From Scyliorhinus canicula (taxonomy: Eukaryota): a stretch of 64,000 bases of DNA. This document shows positions 437 to 60,960 of the stretch, piece by piece (the stretch's first letter is position 1; each line of letters begins with the position of its first letter). The translations under genes and the position numbers were made by a program. The notes beneath the pieces are model-generated. The model ran no database searches. It worked only from the letters and a program-made list of their open reading frames with translations, and was not told the origin of the DNA. The stretch is from the NCBI RefSeq assembly GCF_902713615.1, contig NC_052162.1, positions 124,272,653 to 124,336,652 on the forward strand. The letters are read 5' to 3'.

Positions 437-1154
437 GTTTTGTGTCTCCCTGTATCTCTCCAGGTCAGACAATCCGTTGAAGCCTCGTCCACACACAGAA
501 CACGTGTACGGTCTCTCCCCGCTGTGAATGGTGCGATGTTTTTTCAAGCTGTGTAACTGGTTAAAGCCCTTTCCACAGTCAGTGCTCTGGAACACTCTCA
601 CTCGGGTGTGTGTGTCTCAGTGCTTTTCCAGTCACACGGATGCTTCAAATATTCTGAAATAGACAGAACAAACAAATATTTCTACTGAGAGATTCAAAGA
701 ATCGTGATATTCAGATCCCAAGGAATTGAGTGACTGTCAGATCGAGACGTGACGTTTGAGATTTCTGTCTGTAATTCCTCCTCTTCTAATATCCTGTAAA
801 AGGAATGTACAAACATGATCACTGTCAGTACAGGACAGAAATCAGGAACAGCCAATTCAAGCTTCTATGGAACATTCTTTCCTCTCTCATTCACCACAAG
901 CTGTCAATCTCCATCCATCCCACACCCTCTCTCTATTCTATCCACTCTCTGCTGTATCTAATATTTACCCTCCCAATTATCTTGAAGGTGCTGATTCAGG
1001 CTGATTGACAGATCCATTCAGCCCATTGAGAATACTCAACTAAATATTCAATGGGATCATTGGCCGACCTACCTCAGCACCATTTCCCCACACTATCGCC
1101 CATGTCCCTTGATATCCTCAATATGTAGAAACCTATCAATCTTTGTCTTCAAAT

Positions 1155-5104: not shown

Positions 5105-6061
5105 AGATGTTGGAGTCAGGAGGAGGTTTCAGTCAGTGTGAAGCTCAATCTTCATTCACAAATAAATTAACCTGGTGAGACTTCTTACCGTGCGGCATTC
5201 ACAAAACCGGCGCTCTGATTGGCTGGAAGACCAGAGTCCTTCCGGTTCTCCTACTCTTTTCATTGGTCAATGTCAGCAGAGGGTGTGCACTGTCTTGGAC
5301 ATGCGCAGTCCCAGACCGGGGGAGAGGCGGGGAACACCGAGCGGCTTCTCGGTCTGGTCGGAGCCGTCAGTCGGCTGCCGGGAATCCTTGTCTCAAGGAG
5401 GTGCAGGGCGAGGAGGTAAAAAGAGTGGGGGTGGAGCTCCCGATTCCGGACACCGGACCTGCGCACTGGAACCCTGAGACGTCACCGCGATTCCTCTTGG
5501 CTGTTTCAGGCCTTGCTGCATTGTGACGTCACAGAGGCGGTCCCAGAACGCATGGTCTTTTATGGGACACACTGCGGATTGGCCATCAGCTCAGTGCGTC
5601 CGGCGGTGAAACCCCGCCCACACCTACGTGCGCCTGGTTATCGCTCTCCCCCCCCCCCCCCCACCCATCCCATTGATGGCATTTGGAGATTGACCAATGG
5701 GAACCTACGGAGGACCGGAGGTAATTTGGGCTTCCAGCAAACCAGGAGTGGATAGCACTGTGGCGTCACAGCGCCAGGGTCCCAGGTTCGATTCCCGGCT
5801 GGGTCACTGTCTGTGCGGAGTCTGTACATTCTCCCCATGTCTGTGTGGCTTTCCTCTGGGTGCTCCAGTTTCCTCCCACAATCCAAAGACGTGCAGGTTA
5901 GGTGGATTGGCCATGCTAAATTGCCCTTAGTGACCAAAAAAGGTTAGGCGGGGTTATTGGGTTACAGGGATAGGGTGGAAGTGAGGGCTTAAGTGGGTCG
6001 GTGCTGACCCGATGGGCCGAATGGCCTCCTTCTGCACTGTATGTTCTAAGCCCGCTCCCTG
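5105..6061. promoter_or_regulatory. P1: bidirectional CpG-rich promoter and first exons of ZNF-A (-) and ZNF-B (+)
   Basis: ATTGG boxes, CATGCGCA, perfect CRE TGTGACGTCACA 5522-5533, GC box; leftward donor catct|GTGGGT at 5104, rightward donor cctg|GTGAGC at 6062. Confidence 0.7.
5745..6047 (+). mobile_element. V-SINE inside P1
   Basis: B box ggttcgattccc, V core, atgttct tail. Confidence 0.8.
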
Positions 6062-6784
6062 GTGAGCAGGCCGCGAATCCCCAGGGAAAAGATTTTTACT
6101 CGGCTCCAAAAATCCAGACCTCAGTTCTCACCCTGGAAACTAGGAAAGGTCTTTGTATTTACTACGCTGATGCTCCACCTCTTCAAATCCTCTCTCTGGA
6201 GACTCGGCCTCAAATCCCCGAGGTCAGGGTTTTGTACTTACTGCTCCAGCACTCCACCCTCCGAGTCCACACCCTGGAGGCTAGGTATGGCGAAATAGGT
6301 ATTAGAGACTAGGTATTGGGTAATGGGAGAGAAAAAAATGTTCTCTAGAAATGAGAATTCTCTGTTCTGAATTTCTATCCTGTACTGACTGTGAAGTCTT
6401 CTGTAAACTCCTTTTACAGGATATTAGAAGAGGAGGAATTACAGACAGAAATCTCAAATGTAACGTCTCGATCTGACAGAGTCATCCGATTCCTTGGGAT
6501 CTGAATATCAACGGCCTTTGAATCGAGAAGGGGAAGGAAAAATGTTTGTCCGATCTGTCGGCAACAAAAGATTTTAAATATAATTGTGACTGGAAAAGCA
6601 CCGAGACACACACACCCGAGTGAGAGTGTTCCAGAGCACTGACTGTGGAAAGAGCTTTAACCAGTCACACAGCCTGAAAAAACATCACACCATTCACAGC
6701 GGGGAGAGACCGTACACGTGTCCTGTGTACGGACGAGGCTTCAACTGATATTCTGACCTGAAGAGATTCGAGGAGACCTAAAAC

Positions 6785-7636
6785 ATGGAGAAACCGTGGA
6801 TATGTGGGGATTGTGGGAAGGGATTCAGTGCCCCATCTCAACTGGAGATTCATCGACGCATTCACACAGGGGAGAGGCCGTTCACCTGCTCTGTATGTGA
6901 GAAGGGATTCACTCAGTTATCCCACCTACTTACACACCAGCGAGTTCACAGTGGGGAGAAGCCATTCACCTGCTCTCAGTGTGGGAAGGGATTCAGTGAT
7001 CCATCCGGCCTGCGGTCACACCAGCGCGTTCACACTGGGGAGAGGCCATTCAGCTGCTCTCAGTGCGAGAAGAGATTCAGTGATTCATCCACCCTGCGGA
7101 CACACCGCCGGGTTCACACAAGGGAGAGGCCGTTTAGCTGCTCTCAGTGTGGGAAGGGATTCACTCATTTATCCTATCTGAATGCACACCAGCTAGTTCA
7201 CTCTGGGGTGAGGCCATTCACCTGCTCTCAGTGTCAGAAGGAATTCACTCAGTTATCCCACCTACAGACACACCAGCGGGTTCACACTGGGGAGAAGCCG
7301 TTCACCTGCTCTCAATGTGGGAAGGGATTCAGTCAATTATCCAGCCTGCAGACACACCAGAGGGTTCACACTGGGGAGAAGCCGTTCACCTGCTCTCAAT
7401 GTGGCAAGGGATTCAGTCAGTTATCCAGCCTGCAGAGACACCAGCGAGTTCACACTGGGGAGAAGCCGTTCACCTGCTCTCAGTGTGGAAACAAATTCAC
7501 TGAGTTATCCAGCCTGCAGACACACCAGCGAGTTCACACCGGGGAGAGGCCGTTCACCTGCTCTCGATGTGGGAAGGGATTCACTACATTATCCAGCCTG
7601 CGGAGACATCAGCGAGTTCACACCGGGGAGAGTTAG
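6785..7636 (+). CDS. ZNF-B: 283-aa C2H2 protein, 10 fingers, no effector domain
   Basis: Intact ORF of CxxC..HxxxH units with TGE(K/R)PF linkers; aacATGG; acceptor cttttacag|G at 6419/6420. Confidence 0.92.
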
Positions 7637-7866: not shown

Positions 7867-8270
7867 GATTCCTTTAAGGAGCAAATATCCAACAGGAAAA
7901 GAGATACAACCGTGACTAACAAGAAAAGTTAAAAGTTCCATTCGATCAAAGGAAGGGCCTCATTAAGTGGCCAAAATAGTGTTAACCCTGAGGATTGGGA
8001 ACGTATTTTAGAATTCAGCAAAGGAGGACCAAGAAACTGATCAAGAGAAAATAGAATATGAGAGCAAACTGGCGAGAAACATAAAAAACGACTGGAAAAG
8101 CACCTATAGGAATGTGAAAAGGAAAAGATTAGCAAAGACCAATGTGGGTCCATTCCAGGCAGAGACAGGAGAGTTTATAATGGGGAATAAGGAAATGGCA
8201 GAGAAACTAAACAATGTGTGTCTGTCTTCACGGAGGAAGATACAGAAATTATCCCAAAAACACGAGAGAA
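7867..8270 (+). mobile_element. CR1 LINE fragment downstream of ZNF-B
   Basis: KRKRLAKTNVGP..ETGEFIMGNKEMAEKLN remnant; same piece at about 9605, 39990 and 51860(-). Confidence 0.7.
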
Positions 8271-8339: not shown

Positions 8340-9600
8340 CCGTGTCCTGCAGAAGAAGCGGCAACCCTGGATCTGTCAAATGGCCTGAATCAGCACCTTC
8401 AGGAGAATTGGGAGGGTGAATATTAGATACAGCAGAGTTAGAATGGAGGGAGAGTGTGTGGGATGGAGATTTACAGATTTTGGGGATGAGAGAGGAAAGA
8501 ATGTTCCAGAGAAACTACAATTGTCTGTTCTGAGTTTCTATCCTGTACTGACAGTGATGTATTTTGTAAATACATCATACCATTGACAGCGAGGAGAGAC
8601 CGTACACGTGTTCTCTGTGTGGGTAAGGCTTCAATTGTCTCATCTAGGGAGACACAAGGAGACCCAAAACATGGAGAAACAGTGGAAATACCGGGATTGT
8701 GGGAAGGGATTCAAAGCCCCATCTGCACTGGAAGCTCATCGGTGCATTCACACTGGGAGAGGCCATTCAGCTGCTCTCAGTGTGGGAAAGGATTCAGTCA
8801 GTCATTCACCCTGCAAACACACCAGAGGGTTCAGACTGGGGAGAGGCCATTGAACTGCTCTCAGTGTGGGAAGAGATTCAATCAATCAGCCAGACTGACG
8901 TCCCACCAGCTACTTCACACAGAGGAGAAGCCGTTCACCTGCTCTTAGTGTGGGAAAGGATTCAGACATTTATCCACCCTGCGGAGACATCATCCAGTTC
9001 ACCCCGGAGAGTGAGCATTCACCTGCTCTCAATGTGGGAAGTGATTGTCAGTCATTCACCCTGCAAACACACCAGAGGGTTCACACTGAGGAGAGGCCAT
9101 TCAGCTGCACTCTGTGGGAAGAGATTCTGTGTTTCCTTCTACCTGCTGAGTCACCAACAAGGTCACAAGGGATTACAGGGGTTGGATTCTGCTGTTATTG
9201 TTTCTGCTCTCAATTACACCCGGAACAGCATTGTGTTCATTCTGTCAGTTGGTCAATGGGGAGGGTCGGAGGGTTTATTTCTGCTGGACTGGCCGGTCTC
9301 ACGACTTTGCTTCCAGTGGGCTGATGCTCTTGAGCGTTGTGGCAAATACTTGGCTTCAAATTTCACAAGGATCACAGAGTGAAAGGGTGTTTGGCAGGTA
9401 GATGACGTATAGTTCCTGTTTCTGTTTGGAACCCCAAAGCATGCAGTTCAGATGAAGATAGGCTATGGTGGTTACATGGTTCTGTCTCAGAAGGAACCTG
9501 TCAAGCTGTGGAGGGGCAAGTTGATTGGGAACTTACATTAAAATGTGTAATGATACACAGGCAATCGCATTTAAGGAATGATCACATATTTACATAAAAT
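8340..9600 (+). pseudogene. ZNF-C pseudogene (middle exon, MEKQW start at 8671, decayed fingers, family 3'UTR)
   Basis: Frameshift near 8755, TAG at 8946-8948, further indels; 3'UTR homologous to ZNF-E and ZNF-G. Confidence 0.85.
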
Positions 9601-10499: not shown

Positions 10500-11606
10500 C
10501 TCATATCGTTGCCAAAATAAGTGAAACCCCGAGGTTTGGGAACTTGTTTTAGAAGAAACTCATGAAGAGAAAATAGAATATGAGAGCAGACTGTCTAGAA
10601 ACATAAAAAACGACTGGAAAAGCTCCTATAGGAATGTGAAAAGAAAAAGATTAGCAAAGACCAATGTGGGTCCATTCCAGGGAGAGACAGGAGAGTTTAT
10701 AATGGGGAGTAAGGAAATGGCAGAGAAACTAAACAATGTGTGTCTGTCTTCACAGAGGAAGATACAGAAATTGTCCTAAAAACACCAGAGAACCAAGGGA
10801 CCAGTGAGCACGAGGAACTGAAAGAGATTCGTATTAGTGAAAAAGCAGTACTGGAGAAATTAATGTGATTGAAAGTTAATAAATCCCCAAAAGCTGATGC
10901 TCTACATCCCAGAGTGTTGAAAGAGGCGGCTGTAGAGATAGTGGATACATTGGTGATCATCTTTCAAAATTCTGTAGATTCTGGAATGGCCATTCAGCCC
11001 GTCAAGCCTGCTCCACCATTTAATACGATCATGGCTGATCATCCACTTCAATGCCTTTTTCCCCACACTATCCCCATATCCCTTTGTGTTATTGGTATTT
11101 AGAAATCTGTCAGTCTCTGAGGACTTCCGGTGGCGGCGATGTCCGAGTGAGCCGCACATTCGGTGGGCTCTCACTCCGGCGGGCCTGAACAGCTGTTTCC
11201 CCGCGATAGCGGGACCACGGAGGCGGCAGAAAGGCTGCCGGGAATAGAAGAGGAGAGCGGGCTGCAGAAAATGAAAGTGTGGGAGGCCAGCAGGTGAGGA
11301 AGAAAGAGAGAGAGACGGAGGCAAGGAGGAAGCTGACCTGAAGGGTAAGATGGCGGACCCACGGACCTTCCTTCCTCCAGGACAAAGGGAAAAAAAAGTT
11401 TGGAGTTGCTGAGGAGGGACAGCTTGGACCCACTTCAGATGCCCAGGAGGGGGGAAAAATTTAAGGTGCTGGGCAAAGGAAAGCGGCAGCGAAGGCGCTG
11501 AGGAGCGGGCTGCGGCATATGGAACAGCGGGATTCCAGAAGGCAGAAGAAGAAGGAGAAAAAAGGGACAGAGACAAGGACCTGAAGAAAATTACCTGGGA
11601 CCTAAG

Positions 11607-28844: not shown

Positions 28845-29370
28845 GGTCCGGGTGATCTTGTGTCTCACCGCGTTGGACAGTCAGTTGAAGCCTCGTCCAC
28901 ACACAGAACACCTATACAGTCTCTCCCTGCTGTGAATGGTGTAGTATTTTTTCAGGCTGTGTCACTGGTTATAGCTCTTTCCACAGTCAGTGCTCTGGAA
29001 CACTCTCACTCGGGTGTGTGTGTCTCAGTGCTATTCCAGACACACTGATGTTTAAAATCTCTTGAAGCAGACAGAATAGACAAACTTTTCTCCTTCTAGA
29101 TTCAAAGGCCGATGATCCCAAGAATTGAGTGACTCAGTCAGTTCTTGACGTGATATTTAGTTTGAGATATAGGCCTCGAACTCCTCTCGTTCGAACTTCC
29201 TGCAAACAGATTTTACAATAGTAATCATTGTCAGTACAGGATAGAAACACAGAACAGACAATTCTAGTTTCTATCGAACATTCTTTCCTCTCTCTCTTTC
29301 CCTAAAATGCTCTAAATCTCAATCCCACAGACTCTCCCTCCATTCTCACTCTGCTGTATCTAATATTCAC

Positions 29371-29841: not shown

Positions 29842-30188
29842 CATAGACATAGACATAGAAGACATAGAACAGTACAGCACAGACCAGGCCCTTCGGCCCT
29901 CGATGTTGTGCCGAGCAATGATCACCCTACTTAAACCCACGTAACCCGTATACCCGTAACCCAACAATCCCCCCATTAACCTTACACTACGGGCAATTTA
30001 GTATGGCCAATCCACCTAACCCGCACATCTTTGGACTGTGGGAGGAAACCGGAGCACCCGGAGGAAACCCACGCACACACGGGGAGGACGTGCAGACTCC
30101 ACACAGACAGTGACCCAGCCGGGATTCGAACCTGGGACCCTGGAGTTGTGAAGCATTGATGCTAACCACCATGCTACCGTGAGGCCCC
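29842..30188 (-). mobile_element. V-SINE (HE1-like)
   Basis: Near-identical to 1503-1852. Confidence 0.85.
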
Positions 30189-38090: not shown

Positions 38091-38513
38091 TGTTCTTATG
38101 TAACTTCTATGATTCTGTACTGACAGTGATGATTCCTTTTCCAGGATAATAGAAGAGGAGGAATTACAGACAGAAATCTCAAAAATCACGTCTGAGATCT
38201 GTCAGATTCACTGGATTCGTTGGGGCCTGAATATTATTGGCCTTTGAATCTAGAAGGAGAAATGTTTGTCCGATCTGTTAGCTTCAAAAGATTTTAAACA
38301 TCAGTGTGACTGGAAAAGCACCGAGACACACACACACCCGAGTGAGAGTGTTCCAGAGCACTGACTGTGGAAAGAGCTTGAACCAGTTACACAGTCTGAG
38401 AAAAACATTGCACCATTCACAGTGGGGAGAGACCGTACATGCGTTCTCTGTGTGTGAATAAGACTTCAACAGTGTGATTGTCCGACCTGGGCAGACACGA
38501 GGAGACCCAAAGC

Positions 38514-39524
38514 ATGGAGAAACCGTGGAAATGTGGGGACTGCGGGAAGGGATACAGAGCCCCTTCTCTGTTGGAGATTCATCAACGCATTCACACTGGG
38601 GAGAGTCCATTCACCTGCTCTGTGTGTGGGAAGGGATTCAGTCGTGCATGCACCCTGCAGAGACGTCAGCGAGTTCACACTGGGGAGAAGCCATTCACCT
38701 GCTCTCAGTGTGGGAAGGGATTCAGACATTCATCAACCCTGCAGAGACATCAGCGAGTTCACACTGGGGAGAAGCCATTCACCTGCTTTCAGTGTGGGAA
38801 GAGATTCATTCAGTCATACACTCTGCGAACACATGAGAGAATTCACACTGGCGAGAGGCCATTCAACTGCTCTCAGTGTGGGAAGGGATTCTCTCAGTTA
38901 TCGCACCTGCAATCACACCAGCGAGTTCACACTGGGGAGAGGCATTTAACCTGCCGTCAGTGTGGGAAGGAATTCACTCAGTTATCCCACCTGCAGTTAC
39001 ACCAGAAAATTTGCCCTCGGGAGAAGCCATTCATCTGCTCTCAGTGTGGGAAGGGATTCACTCGGTTATCCCACCTTCAGAGTCACCAGCGAGTTCACAC
39101 TGGGGAGAGGCCGTTCACCTGCTCTCAGTGTGGGGAAGGATTCAGTGATTCATCCACCCTACGGAAACATCAGAGAGTCCACACTGGAGAGAGACCATTC
39201 TCCTGCTCTCAGTGTGGGAAGGCATTCAGTGATTCATCTAACCGGAAGAAACATCAGCGACTTCACACTGGGGAGAGGCCATTCACCTGCTCTCAGTGTG
39301 CGAAGGGATTCACTGTGTTATCCAAACTGAAGTCACACCAGCGAGTTCACACCAGGGAGAAGCCATTCACCTGCTCTGTGTGTGGGAAGGGATTCAGACA
39401 GTCATCCAACCTGCTGAGACATCAGCGAGTTCACACTGGGGAGAGGCCATTCACCTGCTCTCAGTGTGGGACAGGATTTTATGATTCATGGCGCCTGCTG
39501 AGACATCAACAATTTCACAAGTGA
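38514..39524 (+). CDS. ZNF-E: 336-aa C2H2 protein, 12 fingers
   Basis: agcATGG start; intact ORF; finger 2 lacks first His, finger 6 is C2HC; acceptor ttttccag|G at 38144/38145. Confidence 0.92.
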
Positions 39525-39989: not shown

Positions 39990-42950
39990 GATTATTTTGA
40001 GCAACAATAATCCAACAGGAAAGATGATGCAACTGTGGCTACAAGAAAAGCTAAAGATTCCATTAGATCAAAGGAAGAGCCTCATAAAGTGGCCAAACTA
40101 TTAGCCTGAGGATTGGGAACATTTTTTAGAATTCAGCAAAGAAGGACCAAGAGACTGATAAAGAGAAAATAAAATATGAGAGCAAATGGGCAACATAAAA
40201 ACTGACTGGAAAAGCTTCTATAGGAATGTGGAAAGGAAATGATTAGCAAAGACCAATGTGGGTCCATTCCAGGCAGAGACAGGAGAGTTTATAATGGGGA
40301 ATAAGGAAATGGCAGAGAAACTAAACAATGTGTGTCTGTCTTCACGGAGGAAGATACAGAAATTGTCCCACAAACACGAGGGAACCAAGGGACGAGTGAC
40401 CACTAGAAACTGACCGAGATTATTATCAGTGAAAAAGTAGTCCTGGAGAAATTAATGTTGTTGAAAGTTAATAAACTGGGGCTTGTTTAGCACAGTGGGC
40501 TAAAAAGCTGGCTTGAAATGCAATAGCAGCAGCGCAGGCTCTATTCCCGTACCAGCCTCCCCTAGCAGCCGCCCGAATGTGGCGACGTGGGACTTTTCAC
40601 AGTAACTTCATTGAAGCCGACTTGTGACAATAAGCGATTATTATTATATTTCCAAAAGCTGATACTCTACATCCCAGAGTGTTGAAAGAAGCGGCTGTAG
40701 AGATAGTGGATACATTGGTGATCATCTTTCAAAATTCTATAGATTCTGGAATGATTTCTGCAGATTGGAAGGTGGTACATGTAACCCCACTATTTAAGGA
40801 GGGAGAGAGAAAACCACAGACCCATTAGCCTGACATCAGTCGGAGAGAAAATGCTACAATCTATTATAAAGGATGTGATAACATACAAATTAGGAGCAGG
40901 AGTAGGCCACTCGGCCCCTCGAGCCTGCTCCACCATTCAATAAGTTGACGGCTCATCTGATTGTAACCTCAACTCCACACAGGCCCCTTAGAAAATAAAT
41001 CCTGGGAGATAGTTATGGGGAATAAGGAAATGGCAGAGGATCTAAAGAGATATTTTGCATCAGTCTTTACTGTGGAAGATATTTGAATATCCCACTAATA
41101 TGAAAGTATACAGGGCAGGAATTAAATTCCACCACTAGAGAAGCAGTCTTGGACAAACTAATGGGGGTAAAGGCAGATAAATCCCCTGGACCTGATTGCT
41201 TGCATCCTAGATCCTAAAATAAATAACTACAGAGAAAGTGGACGCATTAATTGTAATGTTCCAAAAATCCTTGGATTCTGGAGAAGTTACTGGAGGTATG
41301 GGAAATTGCCAATGTCACACCGCTAGTCAAAAAGGAAGTGAGGGGAAAAAGCTGTAAACTGTAGACCAATCACAATAACATTTATTATTGTAAAAGTACC
41401 AACACTTTTGGAAAATCATAATAAAAGCAAGCAGAGTCAGCATGGCTTCATGCAAAGGAAATAGTGTCTGACTAATTTAGCAGAATTCTTCGAGGATGTC
41501 GCAACTAAAGTGGATAGAGGAGAACCAGTAGATGTGTTGTATTTGGATTTCTAGACCGTGTTCAACAAGGTACCTCATAACATATCAGGTCACAAGATAA
41601 GGGCAGCATTGTGGTTAGCACAATTGCTTCACAGCTCCAGGATCCCAGGTTCGATTCCCGGCTTGGGTCACTGTCTGTGCGGAGTTTGCACGTTCTCCCT
41701 GTGGGTGCTCCGGTTTCCACCCACAGTCCAAAGATGTGCGGGTTAGGTGGATTGGCCATGCTAAATTGTCCTTGGTGTCCAAAATTGCCCTGAGTGTTGA
41801 GAGGGGTTACTGGGTTATGGGGATAGGGTGGAGATGTGGGCTTGGGTAGGGTGCTCTTTCCAAGAGCCGGTGCAGACTCGATGGGCCGAATGGCCTCTTT
41901 CTGCACTGTAAATTCTATGATTCTATAAGAGCCCATGGTGCTGGAGGTAGTATATTGACATGGATAGAGAATTGGCTAATGAGCAGGAAACAGTGAGTGG
42001 GGATAAGGGGTTCTTTTTCAGGTTGGAGACCTGTAACCAGTGGGGTTCCACAGGGATCAGTGCTGGGATCGTAACTGTGTACAATTTATATTAACGACTT
42101 GGAGGAAGGAAGCAAACTTACTGTAGCCAAATTTGCAGACGATATAAATATAAGTGGAGAGGCAAGTTGCGAGAGGGATACAGTTTGCAATGAGATATTG
42201 AGAGGTTACGTAAGTGGGCAAAAAGTTGGAAAATGGAGAATAATGTGAGAAAATGTGAAGTTTATTTTGAGAGGGAGAACAAAAGAACAGTATTATTTAA
42301 ATGGCGAAAAGCTGCAGAAAGCTGCAACACAAAGGGACTCGGGGGAACTTGTGCAGGAAACACGGGAAGCTAGCAGACAGGTGCAGCAGGTAATCAGGAA
42401 GCTAATGGAATGTTGGCCCTGATTCCAAGGGGGTTGGAGTATAAGAGTCGGGAAGTCTTGCTGCAACTGGACAAGGTGCTGGTGACACCACATCTGGAGA
42501 ACTGAGAGCAGTTGTGGTCCCTTTTTTTCATAAAAGATGTTACTTCATTGGCGGTGACTCAGAGAACGTTCACGAGCCTGATCCCAGTTATGGAGGGATT
42601 GTCTTCGGGGCAAAGGTTAAACATGTTGGGTCTCTACTCATTGGAATTTGGAAGAATGAGAGGTGATCTCATTGAAACAAACAGGATTCTGATGGAACTT
42701 CACAGGGTAAATGCTGAGAGGATGTTTCCCCTCGAGAGAATCTAAGCCCAGAGGGATCGTCTCAGAATAAAGAGATGTCAATTTAAGATTAAGATGAGGA
42801 GGAAATTCTTCTCTTGAGGATTGAGAGTCTTTGGAACTGTGAGAGTTGAGGGGACAGAGTCCTTGTGTATATTTAAGGCTGAGATAGATTTTTGATCAGT
42901 GAGGGAACCGAGGATTACAGGGAAAGGGCAGGAAAGTGGATGCAAGAAAT
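39990..42950 (+). mobile_element. Composite of decayed CR1 fragments with SINE insertions (40477-40650, 41601-41927)
   Basis: KSPGPD.LHP, QHGF..GK.CLTNL.EFFE, GVPQGSVLG, KFADD, LGLYSLEF remnants. Confidence 0.8.
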
Positions 42951-51365: not shown

Positions 51366-51887
51366 GAAACTTTGGGGAATTTATTAACTTTCAACCACAT
51401 TAATTTCTCCAGTACTACCTGTTCACTGATACTAATCTCTTTCAGTTCCTCGTGATCACTAGTTCCTTGGTTCTCAGGCCGATTTCTGTATCTTCCTCTG
51501 TGAAGACAGACACACATTGTTTAGTTTCTCTGCCATTTCCTTATTCCCCTTTATAAACTCTCCTGTCTCTGCCTGGAATGGACCCACATTGGTCTTTGCT
51601 AATCTTTTCATTTTCACATTCCTATAGGAGCTTTTCCAGTCGCTTTTTTATGTTTCTCATCAGCTGGATCTCATATTCTATTTTCTGTTTATCAGTTTCT
51701 TCGCCCTCCTTTGCTGAATTCTAAAACAAGTTCCAAATCCTCAGGCTCACTACTATTTGGCCCACTTTATGAGCCTCTTCCTTTGATCCAATGGAATATT
51801 TAACGTTTCTTGTAAGCCACGGTTGTCTCACTTTCGCTGATTTTTGCTCCTTAAAGGAATCTATATTAGTTGCAGATATGTGAAATA

Positions 51888-52102
51888 AGAGTCCCCAAAG
51901 TCCCAGAGGCTGCTTTCCTCTTTGACAGAGTGAACTGACTGGTGGTGATTGAATCTGACAGTCACCACACCACAGTCGAGGGGCAATGTTGAAAAGGTGG
52001 GGCCTTCATGGATAACCTCAGCCGGTACGGGAGTTGAACCCCTGATATTGGAGTCACTGCGCATGACAAACCAGCCATCCAGCCAACTGAGTTAACTCTC
52101 CC
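51888..52102 (-). mobile_element. tRNA-derived SINE supplying the ZNF-F stop codon
   Basis: Paralogous copy of 7626-7840 with the same junction. Confidence 0.8.
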
Positions 52103-53110
52103 CGGTGTGAAGTTGCTGGTGTCTCCGCAGGTTGGATAACGTAGTGAATCCCTTCTCACACTGAGAGCAGGTGAGGGGCCTCTCCCCAGTGTGAACTCGC
52201 TGGTGTGTTTGCAGGCTGGAGAAATTAGTGAATCCCTTCCCACACCGAGAGCAAGTGAATGGCCTCCCCCCAGTGTGAATTCGCTGGTGCTTCCGCAGGC
52301 TGGATAATTGACTGAATTCCTTCCCACACTGAGAGCAGGTGAACGGCTTTTCCCCAGTGTGAACTCGCTGGTGTATTTGTTGGTGGGATAACTGAGTGAA
52401 TCCCTTCCCACACTGAGAGCAGGTGAACGGCTTCTCCCCAGTGTGAATTTGCTTGTGTGAACGCAAGCCAGATGGATCTGTAAATCCCTTCCCACACTGA
52501 GAGCAGGTGAACGGCCTCTCCCCAATGTGAACTCGCTGGTGTGAACGCAAGCCAGATGGATCAGTAAATCCCTTCCCACACTCAGAGCAGGTGAATGGCA
52601 TCTCCCCAGTGTGAACACGCTGGTGTCGCCGCAGGCAGGATAAATGACCAAATCCCTTCCCACATTGAGAGCAAGTAAATGGCTTCTCCCCAGTGTGAAC
52701 TCGTTGGTGTGTTTGTAGGTGGGATAACTGAGTGAATCCCTTCCCACACTGGGAGCAGGTGAACGGCCTCTCCCCAGTGTGAAGCCGCTGGTGTGAACGC
52801 AGGCCAGATGGATCACTGAATCCCTTTCCACACTGAGCGTAGGTGAACGGCTTCTCCCCAGTGTGAACCCGCTGGTGTGTTTGTAGGTGGGATAATTGAG
52901 TGAATCCCTTCCCACACTGGGAGCAGGTGAACGGCCTCTCCCCAGTGTGAACTCGCTGGTGTGACAGCAGGCCGGATAAGTCAGTGAATCCCTTCTCACA
53001 GTGAGAGCACATGAATGGCCTCTCCCCGGTGTGACTGCGTCGATGAATCTCAAGATGAGATGGTGCATTGAATCCTTAATACAGTCCCCACAAAACCATG
53101 GTTTCTCCAT
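52092..53110 (-). pseudogene. ZNF-F: paralog of ZNF-B with a 1-nt deletion in finger 1; 11 fingers open from ATG 53012
   Basis: [12 protein letters not shown] then frameshift near 53074; 306-aa finger ORF 53012-52092; exon start at 53467. Confidence 0.8.
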
Positions 53111-53750
53111 GTTTTGTGTCACCTTGTGTCTCTCCTGGTCAGAAAATCAGTCGGAAGTCTCATCCACACACTGAACACGTGCACGGTCTCTCCCAGCTGT
53201 GGCTTGTGTGATGATTTTTCAGGCTGTGTAGCTGGTTAAAGATCTTTCCACAGTCAGTGCTCTGGAACACTCTTATCGGGTGTGTGTGTCTCAGTGCTTT
53301 TCCAGTCACACTGATGTTTAAAATCTTTTGAGGCTGTCTGATCCGGCAAACATTCCCTTCTGGATTCAAAGGCCGATGATAGTCAGATCCCAAAGAATCT
53401 GGTGACTCTGTCAGATCGAGACGTTATGTTTGAGATTTCTGTCTGTAATTCCTCCTCTTCTCATATCCTGTAAAAGGAGTTTACAAAAGACATCACAGTC
53501 AGTACAGGATAGAAATTCAGAACAGACAATTCTAGTTTCTGGAGAACATTCTTTCCTCTCTCATTCCCCAATACCGAGTCTCTAATGCCTATTTCTCCCT
53601 GTCTTCAGGGAGCGGCAGAGTCTGGGAGCAGTCAGTATAAAGACCTTTCCTCGGGAATTCACCGCCTAGTTTCCAGGGAGTGGACTGAGGGGTCCGGATT
53701 TTCGTAGCTGAAGAAAGAAACCTTTCCTTGGGGATTTACGGCCTACTCAC

Positions 53751-54659: not shown

Positions 54660-56960
54660 ACCGGACCTGAGATCACCAAGCTCACCTGTCTGCCACACCC
54701 AAGAACAAAACCACACAACCTAGTCCCAGACAGATGTGCCCTGTGCACCACCTTGAACTGAGTCAAGCTGCACCGAACACAGGAGGAGGTCGAGTTGATC
54801 CTGTACAGTCTCACTCCACGCCCCCTCCACAGAAACCAGATCCAATTCCCCCTCCCACTTCCTCCTCACCTCATCCAGTGGAGCTTGCTGTGCAGCCAAG
54901 ATTCGACTGTAGATCTGAAATCCTACCCTCACCCACTTCAGCAAGAGATAGAATCCTAATCATCAGAGAGGGCGGGGGTGCTAAAGGAAACACCGAGATC
55001 GCCTTATGTAGGAAATCACGCATCTGAGAAAATTAGAGCTCGAGAGTTGTAATTTTTCTACCAAAAAATGTTTTCTATCAAAACCAATAAACCTGCCGTT
55101 CACAAACAAGTCACCAAACCTCTCCAGCCCTTCCCTCCAGGACCTAAATCCAAATCTGTAGGCACAAAGCGGTGAGTCCCACAGAGAGGGGCCAAGAACG
55201 ATATCTCATCCATCATGGAGACTGGGTCCGTGCCACCACGCACCCCAACAAAACAGAGCAAAGAGCAAGCTGTAGTCACCGTTGATCAACCTTCCCTATC
55301 CCCCATCTCCCCGCCTCTCATTAAAACCACAACCAAAAGCCCGAAGAACAACCCCAGACCCTGAGCTCAACAATCTTTAACCCCAAACAGAACAAACGCA
55401 CTCAGCCCATTATCTAAAACCGAGACTATGTTAATGAGCTGCAGTTACCCCCACCACTTCGCTCCCATTAACTACCTTCTTCAGCTCGCAGGGCAACTCT
55501 CTCCCGGGGCATATAAAACTGAGTAACCATAACAACCAACTCCCCTCCCCCCGCCTGCACCCAACCTTAAATAAAGGAGCCCCCCCCCCCCCCCAAACAG
55601 TAAAATACAAACTGGTACAAGAAACCCCAACAAGATCCCAAAACCACAATCCCTCTCCAATAACAAGAAGACCCCATATATAATACAAAATATACCCAGC
55701 CTGAGTTTCCTCACAAAAGCGTTGGCATCATCCAGCGCCTCAGAAGTAGTGACCTTTTGAATGAAAACTCACTCGGAGTTGTGCGGGGTAAACCGCCCCA
55801 AACCGAACTTCACATATGTAAAGTGCAGCCTTGGCCTTGATAAATGCCGCCCTCTTTTTTGGCAGCCGCGCCCCCTGATGGGGCCTGATGGGACGGCTCT
55901 CCCATTTGTAGTTACGGTGATCATTCGCCCACCTCAGAACTCGTTCCTTATCCCGGTAACTGTGGAAGCTGACGGTTATTGCCCGAGGTGGCTCTCCTGG
56001 GCGAGGTGGCTGACAGAGCGAGTGATGGGCCTGATCCACCTCGGGAGGGAACAACTGTCCACCCTCCCCACCATCTTCCCAAACATCCTGGACGTGTATT
56101 CAGTCGGGTCCGGGCCCTCCAATCCCTCCGGCAGCCCCATAACGCAAAGTGTTTGTCTCCTGGAGCGATTCTTTAAGTCGCCTACTTTGGCAGAGATTTG
56201 TTATTATCAACCAACAGACCAGCTCAGCCTCTAAAGAGACAATCCACTCACTCTTCATCGAAAGGGTGCCCTGCAACCCTTTACCGTTTCGTCCATTTTT
56301 TCCAATATCAATCGAATAGGAGCTGAGGGCTCCTCGATTGATATTGGGAGATCCTCGGAGATAGTCGGCTGTTGCTAAGATGCCCATGAGCATCTCAACT
56401 GACAACACTATAACTTTCGCTTCGGCAGCAGCCGCCGCTATTTTGTTTCCAATGAGCCTGGAAAAGAATCTGAATCGGATGACGATTCTTTGCTCGCTGG
56501 CTTCTTCAAACTTGGTTTCTTGGACATTAACACAGTATGGGAGCTTTATCCCATTGACAAATTTGAAATATCCCCAAACCCCCTCAAATATCGGGTGAAA
56601 ACGGGCAGCACCGTAGCATTGTGGATAGCACAAATGGGTCACTGTGCGGAGTCTGCACATCCTCCCCGTGTGTGCGTGGGTTTCCTCCCACAGTCCAAAG
56701 ATGTGCAGGTTAGGTGGATTGGCCATGATAAATTGCCATTGGTGTCCAAAATTGCCCTTAGCGTTGGGTGGGGTTACTGGGTTATGGGGGTAGGGTGGAG
56801 GTGTTGACCGTGGGTATGTTTGCTCTTTCCAAGAGCTGGTGCAGACTCGATGGGCCGAATGGCCTCCATCTGCACTGTAAATTCTATGAAACTGTGAAAA
56901 CAAAGTCCCCGGATGAGAGCTGCCTCATATGCGGCCGCTCCCGACATGTCGCAACCGGAG
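54660..56960 (-). mobile_element. Internally deleted, decayed L1 in the ZNF-G intron, with V-SINE 56603-56890
   Basis: L1-type 5' end near 56958; ORF1 remnants AH..PRA..DKERVLRW..YPA.LRV; ORF2 C-terminal QFKVVHRAHL. Confidence 0.75.
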
Positions 56961-57376
56961 ACCCTGTCTGTTCTGAATTTCTGTCCTGTACTGACACTGA
57001 TGTCTTTTGTAAATTGTTTTTCAAGGATATTAGAAAAGGAGGACTGACAGACAGAAATCTCAAACTAAACGTCTCGATCAGACTGGGTCACTTGATTCAT
57101 CAGGGCCTGAACATCATCTGACTTTGAATCTAGAAGGAAAAATGTTTGCCCCGTCTGTCAGCTTGAGAAGATTTTAAACATCAGTGTGACTGGAAAAGCA
57201 CCGAGACACACACACCCGAGTGAGAGTGTTCCAGAGCACTGACTGTGGAAAGAGCTTTAACCAGTTACATAGCCTGAAAAAACATCACACCATTCACAGC
57301 AGGAATAGACCGTTCTGTGTGTGAACAAGGCGTGAACTGATTGTCCGACCTGGAGAGACATAAGGAGACCCAAAAT

Positions 57377-58555
57377 ATGGAGAAACGATGGGAATGTGGG
57401 GACTGTGGGAAGGGATTCAGAGTCCCATCTGCACTGGAGATTCATCGACGCAGTCACACTGGGGAGAGACCATTCACCTGCTCTCAGTGTGAGAAGGGAT
57501 TCACTCAGTATTCTGACCTGCAGACACACCATCGAGTTCACACTGGAGAGAGGCCGTTCACCTGCTCTCAGTGTGAGAAGGGATTCAGTCAGTTATCCAG
57601 TTTGCGGACACATCAGCGAGTCCACACTGGAGAGAGACCGTTCAACTGCTCTCGGTGTGGGAAGGGATTCATTCAGTTGATCAGCCTGCAGATACATGAG
57701 CGAGTTCATACTGGTGAGTGGCCGTTCACCTGCTCTCAGTGTGGGAAGGGATTCATTTCCTCAACCAACCTGCAGATACACCAGCGAGTTCACACTGGGG
57801 AAAGGCCGTTTACCTGCTCTCCATGTGGGAAGGGATTCACTCAGTTATCCCACCTGCAGATACACCAGCGAGTTCACACTGGGGAAAAACCGTTCACCTG
57901 CTCTCAGTGTGAGAAGGGATTCACTCAGTTGATCAGCCTGCAGATACACCAGCGAACTCACACTGGGGAGAGGTCGTTCACCTGCTCTCAGTGTGGGAAG
58001 GGATTCACTCGGTTAGACAACCTGCAGTCACACCAGCGAGTTCACACTGGGGAGAGGCCGTTCACCTGCTCTCAGTGTGGGAAGAGATTCACTCGCTTAT
58101 CCCACCTGCAGAGACACCAAAGAGTTCACACTGGGGAGAAGCCATTCACCTGCTCTCAGCGTGGGAAGGGATTCACTCATATGTCCAGCCTGCAGACACA
58201 CCAGCGAGTTCACACTGGGGAGAGGCCATTCACCTGCTCTCAGTGTGGGAATAGATTCACTTTGTTATCCAACCTGCGGGCACACCGTAGGGTTCACACT
58301 GGGGAGAGGCCATTCGCCTGCTCTCAGTGTGAAAAGGGATTCACTCGGTTATCCAACCTACAGAGACACCAGCGAGTTCACACTGGGGAGAAGCCATTCA
58401 CCTGCTCTCCATGTGGGAAGGGATTCACTCAGTTATCCCATTTGCAGGCACATCAGCGAGTTCACACTGGGGAGAGTTTGTTCACCTGTTGTGAATGTGG
58501 GAAGGGATTCCGTGATTCATCGCACCTGCTGAGACATGAACAAGTTCACAAGTGA
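57377..58555 (+). CDS. ZNF-G: 392-aa C2H2 protein, 14 fingers (one C>R)
   Basis: aatATGG start; intact ORF; acceptor ttttcaag|GATATTAG at 57025/57026. Confidence 0.92.
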
Positions 58556-59609: not shown

Positions 59610-60960
59610 ACATAACCTACTTTTGTATTCAATTCCCCCACAATAAACAATAACATTCTATTAGCTTTCCTAATTACTTGCTGTACCTGTATACTAGCCT
59701 TTTGTGATTCATGCTCTTGGACACCCAGATCCCTCTGAGTCTCAGAGCTCTGCAATCTCTCACCATTTAGATAATAAGCTTTTTTATTCTTCTGGCCAAC
59801 ACGGACAATTTCACATTTTCCTACGTTATTCTCCATTTGGCAGATCTTTTCCCACTCACTTAACCTATCTATATCCCTTTGTAATCTCCTTATGTCCTCT
59901 TCACAATTTACTTTCCTCCCTGTGGGGGCAGCACAAGTGGATAGCACTGTGGCTTCACAGCGCCAGGGTCCCAGGTTCGACTCCCCGCTGGGTCACTGTC
60001 TGTGCGGAGTCTGCATGTTCTCCCCATGTCTGCGTGGGTTTCCTCCGGGTACTCTGGTTTCCTCCCACAGTCCAAAGACATGGTGGTTAGGTGGATTGGC
60101 CATGATAAATTGCCCTTAGTGACCAAAGAAAGGTTAGATGTGGTTATTGGGATAGGGTAGAAGTGAAGGCTTAAGTGCGTTGGTGCAGACTTGATTGGCC
60201 GAATGGCCTCCTGCACTGTGTGTTCTATCTTTGTATCAGAGAAGCAGGCCATTCAGCTCATCAAACCTACTCTCCCATTCAATATAATCATTCACTTCAT
60301 TGCCTTTTTCCCCACACTATCCGCATCTCCTTTTGAAATGAAATGAAAATCACTTATTGTCACAAGTAGGCTTCAATGAAGTTACTGTGAAAAGCCCCTA
60401 GTCGCCACATTCTGGCACCTGTTCCGGGAGGCTGTTATGGGAATCGAACCGTGCTGCTGGCCTGACTTGGTCTGCTTTTAAAGCCAGCGATTTAGCCCAG
60501 TGTGCTAAACCAGCCCCTTGTGTTATTGGGATTTAGAAATCTGTCAGTCGCTGCTTTAAACACACTCAATGACTGAGCTCCCACAGCCCTCTGGGGTAGA
60601 GAATTCCAAAGATTCACAACCCTCTGAGTAAAGAAATGTCTCCTCCGAGACCCGTCCTAAGTGGCTTCCCCCTTATTTTGACATTGTGTCCCCTGGTTCC
60701 AGACTCTCCAACCAGGGGAAACATCTCACCTGCACCAACCCTGTCTATTCCTTTATGGATTTTGTAAGTTTCAATGAGATCACTTCTCATTATTTGAAAC
60801 TCTAGAGAACACAGGTCAGGTTTCCCCAATCTCTCCTCAAAGGGCAGCCCTGCCATCCCTGGAACAAGTCTGGTGAATGTTTGTTGCGCTCCCACTCTGG
60901 CGATAAGGGCAGTAAAACTGTACACAGTCCTCCAGCTGCGGTCTGACCAAGGTTCTGCAC
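59610..60960 (-). mobile_element. CR1 fragments with V-SINE (59925-60230) and short SINE (60335-60517)
   Basis: Inverted paralog of about 49000-49950. Confidence 0.8.

What the first reader, a model, noticed from the sequence alone, without database searches (positions are those of the whole stretch)
6420..6787. ZNF 5'UTRs built from dead zinc fingers carry a conserved 11-codon uORF
Seen: the leader in front of each intact-leader gene is a relic of about 3 fingers. In four paralogs the first relic finger forms an equal-length uORF: MFVRSVGNKRF* (6542-6577), MFVRSVSFKRF* (38262-38297), MFAPSVSLRRF* (57142-57177) and MFAGSDSLKRF* (53353-53318, -). Start, stop and length are fixed while internal codons vary. 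ZNF-D has AAG and ZNF-A has ATA at the start position. The following 110 nt (gactggaaaagcac..ccattcacag) look almost invariant by eye although non-coding. Inference: a family-wide translational control cassette made from recycled coding fingers, with per-gene on/off variants. I know of no description of it.
Basis: partly seen in the sequence, partly recalled or inferred. Interest (0 to 1): 0.8.

Follow-up and report, generated by a model that had tools for sequence, protein, structure and literature searches.

The report
Fossil-finger leader: neutral uORF, constrained block
In a catshark zinc-finger gene cluster the 5' leaders are dead zinc fingers; the small upstream reading frame in them drifts as neutral sequence would, but the ~120 bases after it are kept almost unchanged and probably form a regulatory element.

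Summary
The window is Scyliorhinus canicula. It carries six full copies and one deleted copy of a ZNF exon-2 leader (~360 nt) that reads, in frame with the MEKPW start, as about three disabled C2H2 fingers. An 11-codon ATG..TAA uORF sits at the stated coordinates in B, E, G and F.

- The uATG survives in 4 of 6 copies, against about 4.1 expected neutrally. The stop survives in 5 of 6, against about 4.6.
- uORF bases change as fast as intron bases (0.83 substitutions per site) and show no codon periodicity.
- The uORF is kept in a frameshifted pseudogene (F) and is missing from the gene with the longest open frame (D).

The non-neutral feature is the block after the uORF (6578-6700, core 6600-6665).
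- It shows 0.26 (core 0.14) substitutions per site, against 0.66-0.83 in the flanks and 0.58 in the first coding finger (P about 6e-9).
- It has no codon periodicity. It looks relaxed in pseudogene F and is deleted in pseudogene C.
- It folds into a stable three-way junction, but covariation does not support that fold.

Most likely it is a cis-regulatory element made from dead coding sequence. New uATGs are also depleted in the leader (4 against 9.7 expected, P = 0.02).

First readers of this scan noted the same leader at 15 or more other loci of this genome; those notes are unchecked.

The parts
5300..5416 (+). Candidate non-coding exon 1 of gene B, ending at a GAG|GTAAAA donor. It lies in a compact bidirectional promoter shared with gene A.
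   Evidence: Read from the sequence. Homologous promoter and exon-1 regions lie upstream of E and G. TSS and splicing are inferred, not shown.
6383..6419 (+). 3' end of intron 1 of B: branch-point-like TACTGAC, pyrimidine tract and acceptor AG.
   Evidence: TCCTGTACTGA is invariant in all seven copies, and the acceptor AG is kept in the six full copies.
6420..6784 (+). Exon-2 leader of B (365 nt), a fossil of about three C2H2 fingers in frame with the main ATG. In-frame stops are at 6575, 6581, 6587, 6746 and 6779.
   Evidence: Three-frame translations of all six copies; alignment A1.
6542..6577 (+). uORF of B, MFVRSVGNKRF*, the first half of fossil finger 1. Context is AAAATGT; its stop lies 207 nt before the main AUG.
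6578..6700 (+). Constrained block in B: linker plus most of fossil finger 2. The core is 6600-6665 and the 87-nt folding domain is 6584-6670.
6785..7636 (+). Main ORF of B, 283 aa, starting at MEKPW. The ATG lies where a finger linker would have its Gly codon.
   Evidence: This exact product is on record in GCA_902713615.2.
38262..38297 (+). uORF of E, MFVRSVSFKRF*.
38298..38423 (+). Constrained block of E.
57142..57177 (+). uORF of G, MFAPSVSLRRF*. It is not in frame with the main ATG because of an 8-nt deletion downstream.
57178..57300 (+). Constrained block of G, with one substitution against the consensus.
53318..53353 (-). uORF of F, MFAGSDSLKRF*. F is a pseudogene with a frameshift in its first coding finger.
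53196..53317 (-). Block of pseudogene F. It has the most substitutions relative to its flanks, and the fold is lost.
28929..29051 (-). Block of D. D has the longest open frame (531 aa) and AAG instead of a uATG. The block carries one compensatory AU to UA pair and two broken outer-stem pairs.
521..643 (-). Block of A. A has ATA for the uATG and no uORF stop, and its main ORF has a nonsense codon at position 74.
8486..8853 (+). Copy C, a pseudogene. A deletion of about 290 nt fuses the end of intron 1 to the last ~25 nt of the block, and the first finger is frameshifted.

Best explanation
Shown: these are paralogous genes of a catshark poly-zinc-finger family. Their three N-terminal fingers died before the six copies diverged; most disabling stops are shared by five of the six. 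Their start codon now lies in what was a finger linker (QN-MEKPW). The dead fingers form most of a ~360-nt exon-2 leader. The 11-codon uORF is the front half of dead finger 1, closed by a TAA. It was inherited from the common ancestor. It has since been lost at the rate expected for three unconstrained bases, and its codons evolve like intron. The ~120 nt right after it (6578-6700, core 6600-6665) evolve 3-5 times more slowly than the rest of the leader, and more slowly than the first coding finger. There is no codon periodicity, and the finger frame is not kept open across all copies. Inferred: the uORF is a tolerated by-product. It is short, has a purine at -3 but T at +4, and sits about 200 nt before a strong-context main AUG. 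Leaky scanning and reinitiation should therefore leave main-ORF translation largely intact. The block is a cis-regulatory element made from dead coding sequence. It most likely acts in the mRNA leader as a sequence-specific binding platform that can fold into a ~87-nt three-way junction. It would then tune scanning, translation or stability of the family's mRNAs. Its constraint does not depend on the uORF, because it holds in D and A, which lack the uATG.
For: Species and CDS starts. Six copies and alignment. Fossil fingers, shared stops, uORF peptides and contexts. Star-like tree with terminal branches of 0.07-0.18. uATG retention 4 of 6 against about 4.1 expected, computed from the per-lineage substitution counts. 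Substitutions per site summed over six lineages: intron 0.83, 5' leader 0.66, uORF 0.83, block 0.26, core 0.14, 3' leader 0.73, first coding finger 0.58; block depletion P = 6e-9. The depletion holds after removing CpG columns (0.19 against 0.42-0.50) and in nearly all 15 pairs (in B-F the intron end is as conserved). Codon-position counts are 9/11/10 in the uORF and 12/9/11 in the block, against 12/24/31 in the coding finger. Pseudogene F carries 8 of 26 block substitutions against 4 expected (P = 0.04), and C has lost the block. Fold z-scores are -3.2 to -3.8 in B, A, E and G, and weaker on the antisense strand in three of these four. One compensatory pair is seen in D. New uATGs number 4 against 9.7 expected, two of them in F.
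Against: Only six copies from one window were available. No transcript, TSS, Ribo-seq or cross-species DNA could be reached, so '5'UTR' rests on splice-site anatomy and the recorded CDS starts. Power to detect weak selection on the uATG is low. Other first readers report the same uORF elsewhere in the genome, so a census could still show excess retention. The RNA-structure reading is weak: loops are as invariant as stems, substitutions fall in paired and unpaired columns in proportion (12 to 6), and they break pairs more often than they keep them (8 to 3). No Rfam family matches. The domain boundaries for the z-scores were chosen after folding; an arbitrary 133-nt cut gave z = -2.0. A DNA-level role fits the invariance equally well.
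Confidence: 0.5

Rival explanations
1. The uORF and the invariant stretch together form a selected translational-control cassette, and copies without the uATG (D, A) are deliberate 'off' variants.
For: The uATG is the only ATG in the consensus 359-nt leader, and new ATGs are under-represented, so uATGs seem to matter here. All four uATGs have a purine at -3. The uORF stop lies only 6-9 nt before the 5' arm of the predicted outer stem, so a terminating ribosome would open it. D lacks the uATG and also has a disturbed outer stem. Unchecked first-reader notes report the same uORF at other loci.
Against: Retention of ATG (4 of 6) and stop (5 of 6) equals the neutral expectation. The uORF is the fastest-evolving leader segment. 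Pseudogene F keeps it, while D, with the longest open frame, lacks it. Block constraint holds without the uATG. A short uORF about 200 nt upstream of a strong AUG is expected to repress only mildly; this rests on the established scanning and reinitiation rules, not on a test here.
Confidence: 0.15
2. The block works on DNA, not RNA. It is a long binding site for a poly-zinc-finger or other factor, comparable to the ZNF274 motif in human ZNF genes. It would mark the family's genes for common chromatin, transcriptional or splicing control.
For: Invariance covers predicted loops as well as stems and shows no pairing logic. A 60-120 bp footprint fits a many-fingered protein. There is a precedent: the ZNF274 29-mer lies in finger-coding DNA and encodes the linker and H2 helix (PMC2999557). 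The antisense strand of B folds about as well as the sense strand.
Against: Nothing was tested directly. KRAB/TRIM28-type recruitment is not established for sharks; this is my background knowledge, not a test. The distance from the promoter varies from about 1 to 4 kb between copies, while the position within the mRNA is fixed. Relaxation in the ORF-dead copy F fits an mRNA-linked role somewhat better.
Confidence: 0.25
3. The block has no function. It looks invariant because of local gene conversion among the many family members, or because of a mutational cold spot.
For: ZNF clusters are prone to conversion. The block contains a (CA)n run. Every copy differs from the consensus only by private changes, as would happen if each were pulled toward a family consensus.
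Against: Conversion would have to hit the same ~120 nt in six loci while sparing the adjacent leader and the first coding finger. No pair shares derived variants, and no pair is identical. The effect persists without CpG columns. Pseudogene F is relaxed.
Confidence: 0.1
4. The leader is not the 5'UTR of the main transcript. Transcription may start, or splicing may enter, downstream of the uORF. Alternatively the exon may mainly serve as an acceptor for read-through transcripts from upstream genes.
For: No transcript data were available. An NCBI S. canicula model (P0187) ends in a tail homologous to the first ~100 nt of a leader read in another frame, so leader-type exons can be joined to upstream arrays. 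A GTGAG donor-like site (about 6620) and a CACAG acceptor-like site (6696-6700) lie inside the block, and the donor-like site is destroyed in pseudogene F.
Against: A conserved branch point, pyrimidine tract and AG lie at 6383-6419 in the copies. ATG depletion and a deficit of new ATGs run across the whole leader. The conservation peak is not next to the internal AG.
Confidence: 0.1

Closest known systems
Position-conserved, peptide-independent regulatory uORFs (GCN4/ATF4 type)
   Same: A short uORF sits well upstream of the main AUG at a reinitiation-permissive distance. Start, stop and length are shared between copies while the peptide varies.
   Different: Start and stop are not retained above the neutral expectation. 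The uORF is kept in a pseudogene and absent from an intact gene. There is one uORF, not an ordered series, and no translation data exist.
Conserved-peptide uORFs (CPuORFs)
   Same: A small ORF in the leader shared across a gene family.
   Different: The peptide is not conserved. The substitution rate equals that of the intron, and there is no codon periodicity.
Finger-coding sequences with a second, nucleotide-level role in human ZNF genes: the ZNF274 29-mer (PMC2999557) and the zinc-finger coding regions that restrict polyadenylation and export (PMC6242934)
   Same: A family-wide nucleotide element lies in finger-derived sequence, which allows coordinated control of many paralogs.
   Different: Here the finger is dead and lies in the 5' leader, so nothing but the nucleotide-level role can be conserved. 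No binding or export data exist, and the species lacks a documented KRAB/TRIM28 system.
Decay of N-terminal fingers and start-codon relocation in poly-ZNF genes (degenerate fingers)
   Same: Terminal fingers lose their ligands and frame, and the ORF shortens.
   Different: The decayed part has become untranslated leader shared by a whole subfamily, and one sub-segment is afterwards held constant.

Membership tests
Regulatory uORF (position-conserved, peptide-independent) | AUG with an in-frame stop upstream of the main AUG in the leader | tested here: met
   Present in B, E, G and F; absent in A and D. That the exon is 5'UTR is inferred from splice-site anatomy and the recorded CDS starts.
Regulatory uORF (position-conserved, peptide-independent) | Start and stop retained above the neutral expectation | tested here: not met
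   ATG is kept in 4 of 6 against about 4.1 expected, and the stop in 5 of 6 against about 4.6, from the branch lengths and substitution counts. Power is low with six copies.
Regulatory uORF (position-conserved, peptide-independent) | Ribosome occupancy and an effect on main-ORF output | not testable with these tools
   No Ribo-seq or reporter data were available.
Conserved-peptide uORF | Purifying selection on the peptide | tested here: not met
   0.83 substitutions per site, equal to the intron. Codon-position counts are 9/11/10.
Fossil coding sequence turned leader by start-codon relocation | The leader translates in frame with the main ORF into recognisable finger motifs broken by stops that most copies share | tested here: met
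   Copy A reads as finger motifs with intact ligands up to QNMEKPW. The TGA corresponding to 6587 is in 5 of 6 copies, and the TGA corresponding to 6746 is in all but A and G.
Fossil coding sequence turned leader by start-codon relocation | New start codon within former linker codons | tested here: met
   QN-M-EKPW sits where a finger linker has T-G-EKP. MEKPW-start products are on record for B and D and exist in Cetorhinus and Hemiscyllium models.
Structured cis-regulatory 5'UTR RNA element | Folding stability beyond shuffled controls | tested here: met
   z = -3.2 to -3.8 in B, A, E and G; -1.6 in D and -0.9 in F. The copies are about 93% identical, so these values are not independent.
Structured cis-regulatory 5'UTR RNA element | Covariation that preserves the base pairs | tested here: inconclusive
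   One compensatory pair. Substitutions keep 3 pairs and break 8, and paired and unpaired columns are hit in proportion. There is too little variation to decide.
Structured cis-regulatory 5'UTR RNA element | Match to a described RNA family | tested here: not met
   Rfam 15: best hit E = 0.85, far below the gathering score.
ZNF274-type DNA motif in finger-derived sequence | Nucleotide motif conserved beyond coding need across paralogs | tested here: met
   The block is non-coding yet the most conserved segment of the unit.
ZNF274-type DNA motif in finger-derived sequence | Occupancy by a zinc-finger protein with a heterochromatin mark | not testable with these tools
   No chromatin data were available.

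The most novel reading that the evidence does not exclude
The ~120-nt block is the remains of a dead zinc finger kept as a family-wide regulatory switch. It would be an RNA (or DNA) element shared by dozens of dispersed catshark ZNF genes. It may be read together with the uORF that ends 6-9 nt before its outer stem, so that ribosome traffic on the uORF remodels the element and sets translation of the whole family in concert.
Probability: 0.2. Interest if true: 0.7.

Novelty: new member of a known kind. Interest (0 to 1): 0.38.

Why it matters
Large lineage-specific ZNF families are usually studied through their proteins, and little is known about how hundreds of paralogs are regulated together. 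Here the coding role of a finger is gone, so any remaining constraint must act on the nucleotides. That gives a clean case for asking whether finger-derived sequence serves as a shared regulatory handle, as has been suggested for human ZNF genes. The result also shows that a uORF shared by paralogs, with variable codons, is not by itself evidence of selection.

Tried and rejected
- **Protein homology with the first 90 residues of B:** swamped by generic poly-ZNFs.
- **The 52-aa stop-free relic ORF as query:** no candidates.
- **An N-terminal profile limited to short proteins:** found MEKPW-start models in other sharks. Their DNA could not be fetched because the assembly files are too large.
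- **Exact-product look-ups:** B and D gave only the reference genome without DNA. E, G and A are not on record. The cluster look-up was blank. No transcript contigs were obtained.
- **Exact 23-mer of the core against metagenome and prokaryote genome collections:** no matches.
- **Rfam:** nothing.
- **Literature searches for a description of this leader, or of shark ZNF leaders:** nothing relevant.
- **Block coding in any frame:** rejected. There are stops in every frame on both strands in at least four copies, no ATG and no codon periodicity.
- **CpG decay of the flanks as the cause:** rejected.
- **An 81-nt mini-intron inside the block (GTGAG at about 6620 to CACAG at 6700):** considered but untestable here, and the conservation peak does not sit at the acceptor.
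- **Extra GACTGGAAAAGCAC hits (8090, 10612, 51628 and others):** these lie in a LINE-like repeat and share only the 14-mer.
- **miRNA-seed and transcription-factor motif matching by eye:** dropped as uninformative.

Full report
**What is there**

The window contains no N. It belongs to Scyliorhinus canicula: the 283-aa and 531-aa products that start at MEKPW in copies B and D are on record in assembly GCA_902713615.2.

BLASTN of 5900-6900 against the window finds six full copies of the unit 'end of intron 1 + exon-2 leader + first finger':
- A: 891 to 321 (-)
- B: 6322-6900 (+)
- D: 29292 to 28729 (-)
- E: 38134-38628 (+)
- F: 53684 to 52996 (-)
- G: 56967-57492 (+)

There is also a deleted copy, C (8486-8777).

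Upstream of B lies a CCAAT-rich, bidirectional-looking promoter with a GAG|GTAAAA donor at about 5416. Homologous regions lie upstream of E and G. All seven copies share the invariant TCCTGTACTGA (branch-point-like TACTGAC). The six full copies also share a pyrimidine tract and an acceptor AG just before the leader. The two-exon structure with a non-coding exon 1 is therefore plausible, but it is inferred.

**The leader is fossil fingers**

Read in frame with the main ATG, each leader shows about three C2H2 fingers.
- Copy A is the least damaged. It keeps the Cys and His ligands of fingers 1 and 3 and reads straight into QNMEKPW.
- The disabling changes are shared by most copies: the TAA after finger 1's front half (5 of 6), the TGA corresponding to 6587 (5 of 6), Ser for the first Cys of finger 2 (6 of 6), and the TGA corresponding to 6746 in the four copies still in register (A has GGA; G is out of frame there).
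- The start codon sits where a linker normally has Gly.

The N-terminal fingers therefore died before these copies diverged. MEKPW-start models also exist in Cetorhinus and Hemiscyllium, so the arrangement is probably old.

**The uORF**

D has AAG at the start position. A has ATA and also lacks the stop.

Gene status:
- B, D, E and G have long open frames.
- A has a nonsense codon at position 74 followed by further intact fingers.
- F is frameshifted in its first finger.
- C is deleted and frameshifted.

So the uORF is present in three intact genes and one pseudogene. It is absent from one intact gene, D, which has the longest open frame, and from one pseudogene.

The tree of the copies is star-like, with terminal branches of 0.07-0.18. 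From the per-lineage substitution counts outside the block, the chance that three given bases stay untouched is 0.55-0.77 per lineage. That predicts about 4.1 retained ATGs; 4 are observed. For the stop, about 4.6 are predicted and 5 observed.

The uORF columns carry 0.83 substitutions per site summed over the six lineages, the same as the intron end (0.83) and more than the rest of the leader. Codon positions are hit 9/11/10 times, against 12/24/31 in the first coding finger. The caveat is that six copies give little power.

By the established scanning rules, the expected effect is small. The uATGs have a purine at -3 and T at +4. The uORF is 11 codons long. Its stop lies 199-216 nt before a main AUG in strong context (A at -3, G at +4). 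This arrangement allows both leaky scanning and efficient reinitiation.

**The leader does look scanned**

The consensus leader has a single ATG in 359 nt, and that ATG is the uATG. I re-placed each lineage's observed substitutions at random positions with the same starting base. This predicts 9.7 new ATGs across the six lineages. Four are observed (P = 0.022), and two of those are in pseudogene F. ATG density in the leaders is 0-3 per 360 nt. That is below the coding arrays (2.1-3.0) and well below the introns (5-7), which match their shuffles. This is modest evidence that uATGs are selected against here. It makes the one inherited uATG look tolerated rather than protected.

**The block is the real signal**

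Mean pairwise identity is 93% in 6588-6700. It is 80% in the 5' leader, 76% in the uORF, 78% in the 3' leader, 83.5% in the first coding finger and 65% in the intron end. The sliding-window peak reaches 96-98% at 6615-6660.

- Substitutions per site are 0.26 in the block and 0.14 in the core. Of 200 leader substitutions, 32 fall in the block against 68 expected (P = 6e-9).
- The deficit remains after removing every CpG-context column (0.19, core 0.10, against 0.42-0.50).
- It is seen in nearly all 15 pairs; in the closest pair, B-F, the intron end is as conserved.
- The block is not coding. Its finger frame is interrupted in four copies, the other frames and the opposite strand have stops, there is no ATG, and codon positions are hit 12/9/11.
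- Pseudogene F carries 8 of the 26 block substitutions counted in F plus the intact genes, against 4 expected (P = 0.04). C has lost the block altogether.
- Each copy differs from the consensus only by private changes. The adjacent leader and the first coding finger are not homogenised. Local gene conversion is therefore an unlikely cause.

**How the block might work**

The 87-nt domain (6584-6670 in B) folds into the same three-way junction in B, A, E and G. It has a 10-bp outer stem, a 5-bp inner stem and two short hairpins.
- z-scores are -3.2 to -3.8, and the antisense strand is weaker in three of these four copies. The fold is weakened in D (-1.6) and in pseudogene F (-0.9).
- D carries one compensatory AU to UA exchange.
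- Against this, loops are as invariant as stems, substitutions fall 12 to 6 in paired against unpaired columns (the expected share), and they break 8 pairs while keeping 3.
- The copies are too alike for the z-scores to count as independent. An arbitrary 133-nt cut gave only z = -2.0. No Rfam family matches.

What is shown, then, is constraint on the primary sequence.

I rate a sequence-specific element acting in the mRNA leader as the most likely reading. The position is fixed within the mRNA while the distance from the promoter varies. The sense strand folds better. The element is relaxed in a copy whose ORF is dead.

A DNA-level binding site is a serious rival. There is a precedent in human ZNF genes, where the ZNF274 29-mer lies in finger-coding DNA and encodes the linker and H2 helix (PMC2999557). 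RNA-level roles of finger-coding sequence have also been reported (PMC6242934).

**What I could not do**

No DNA from other copies in this genome or from other sharks could be fetched, and no transcript evidence was found. Notes of this scan's first readers describe the same fossil-finger leader, its shared TGA stops and the 11-codon uORF at 15 or more other loci on several chromosomes of this genome. They are unchecked, but they suggest a large dispersed family on which the decisive census can be run.

**Verdict**

The uORF is most likely a neutral leftover. The adjoining block is a genuinely constrained non-coding element of unknown but probably regulatory function. I found no description of it in the literature searches. 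I class it as a new member of a known kind, a lineage-specific conserved leader element, and rate its interest as moderate.

Noticed in passing
window 51962-53110 (-): In pseudogene F the frameshift in finger 1 moves reading into an alternative frame of the finger array. That frame then stays open for about 380 codons, so the ORF list shows a long 'gene' that is not a zinc-finger protein.
   Followed up: partly
P0187 (NCBI model, S. canicula 'zinc finger protein 774-like') against window 697-792 (-): The C-terminal 21 residues of this annotated protein match the first ~100 nt of a leader read in a non-finger frame and end at the same stop (57% identity, E = 1e-6). A leader-type exon is therefore joined behind a finger array in at least one gene model. 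This could be read-through or chimeric splicing between neighbouring ZNF genes.
   Followed up: partly
window 8486-8853 (+): Copy C has a deletion of about 290 nt. It joins the intron just after the branch-point region to the last ~25 nt of the block, directly before the internal CACAG. Its first finger is also frameshifted.
   Followed up: partly
window 5180-5420: A compact bidirectional promoter-like region lies between genes A (-) and B (+). It has CCAAT boxes on both strands and opposed splice donors (ACG|GTAAGA on the minus strand near 5190, GAG|GTAAAA on the plus strand at 5416).
   Followed up: no
window 5747-6048, with copies at 1510-1819, 29926-30154, 41611-41917, 56635-56886 and 59936-60227: A SINE-like repeat of about 300 bp (70-86% identity between copies) lies in the introns and spacers of the cluster.
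   Followed up: no
window 8090-8103, 10612-10625, 51628-51641 and others: The 14-mer that opens the conserved block also occurs in a LINE-like repeat. Similarity does not extend beyond the 14-mer, so it is probably coincidence.
   Followed up: partly
P0126: A 359-bp contig filed under Salmonella enterica encodes a shark-like C2H2 finger array. It is most likely vertebrate contamination of that assembly.
   Followed up: no
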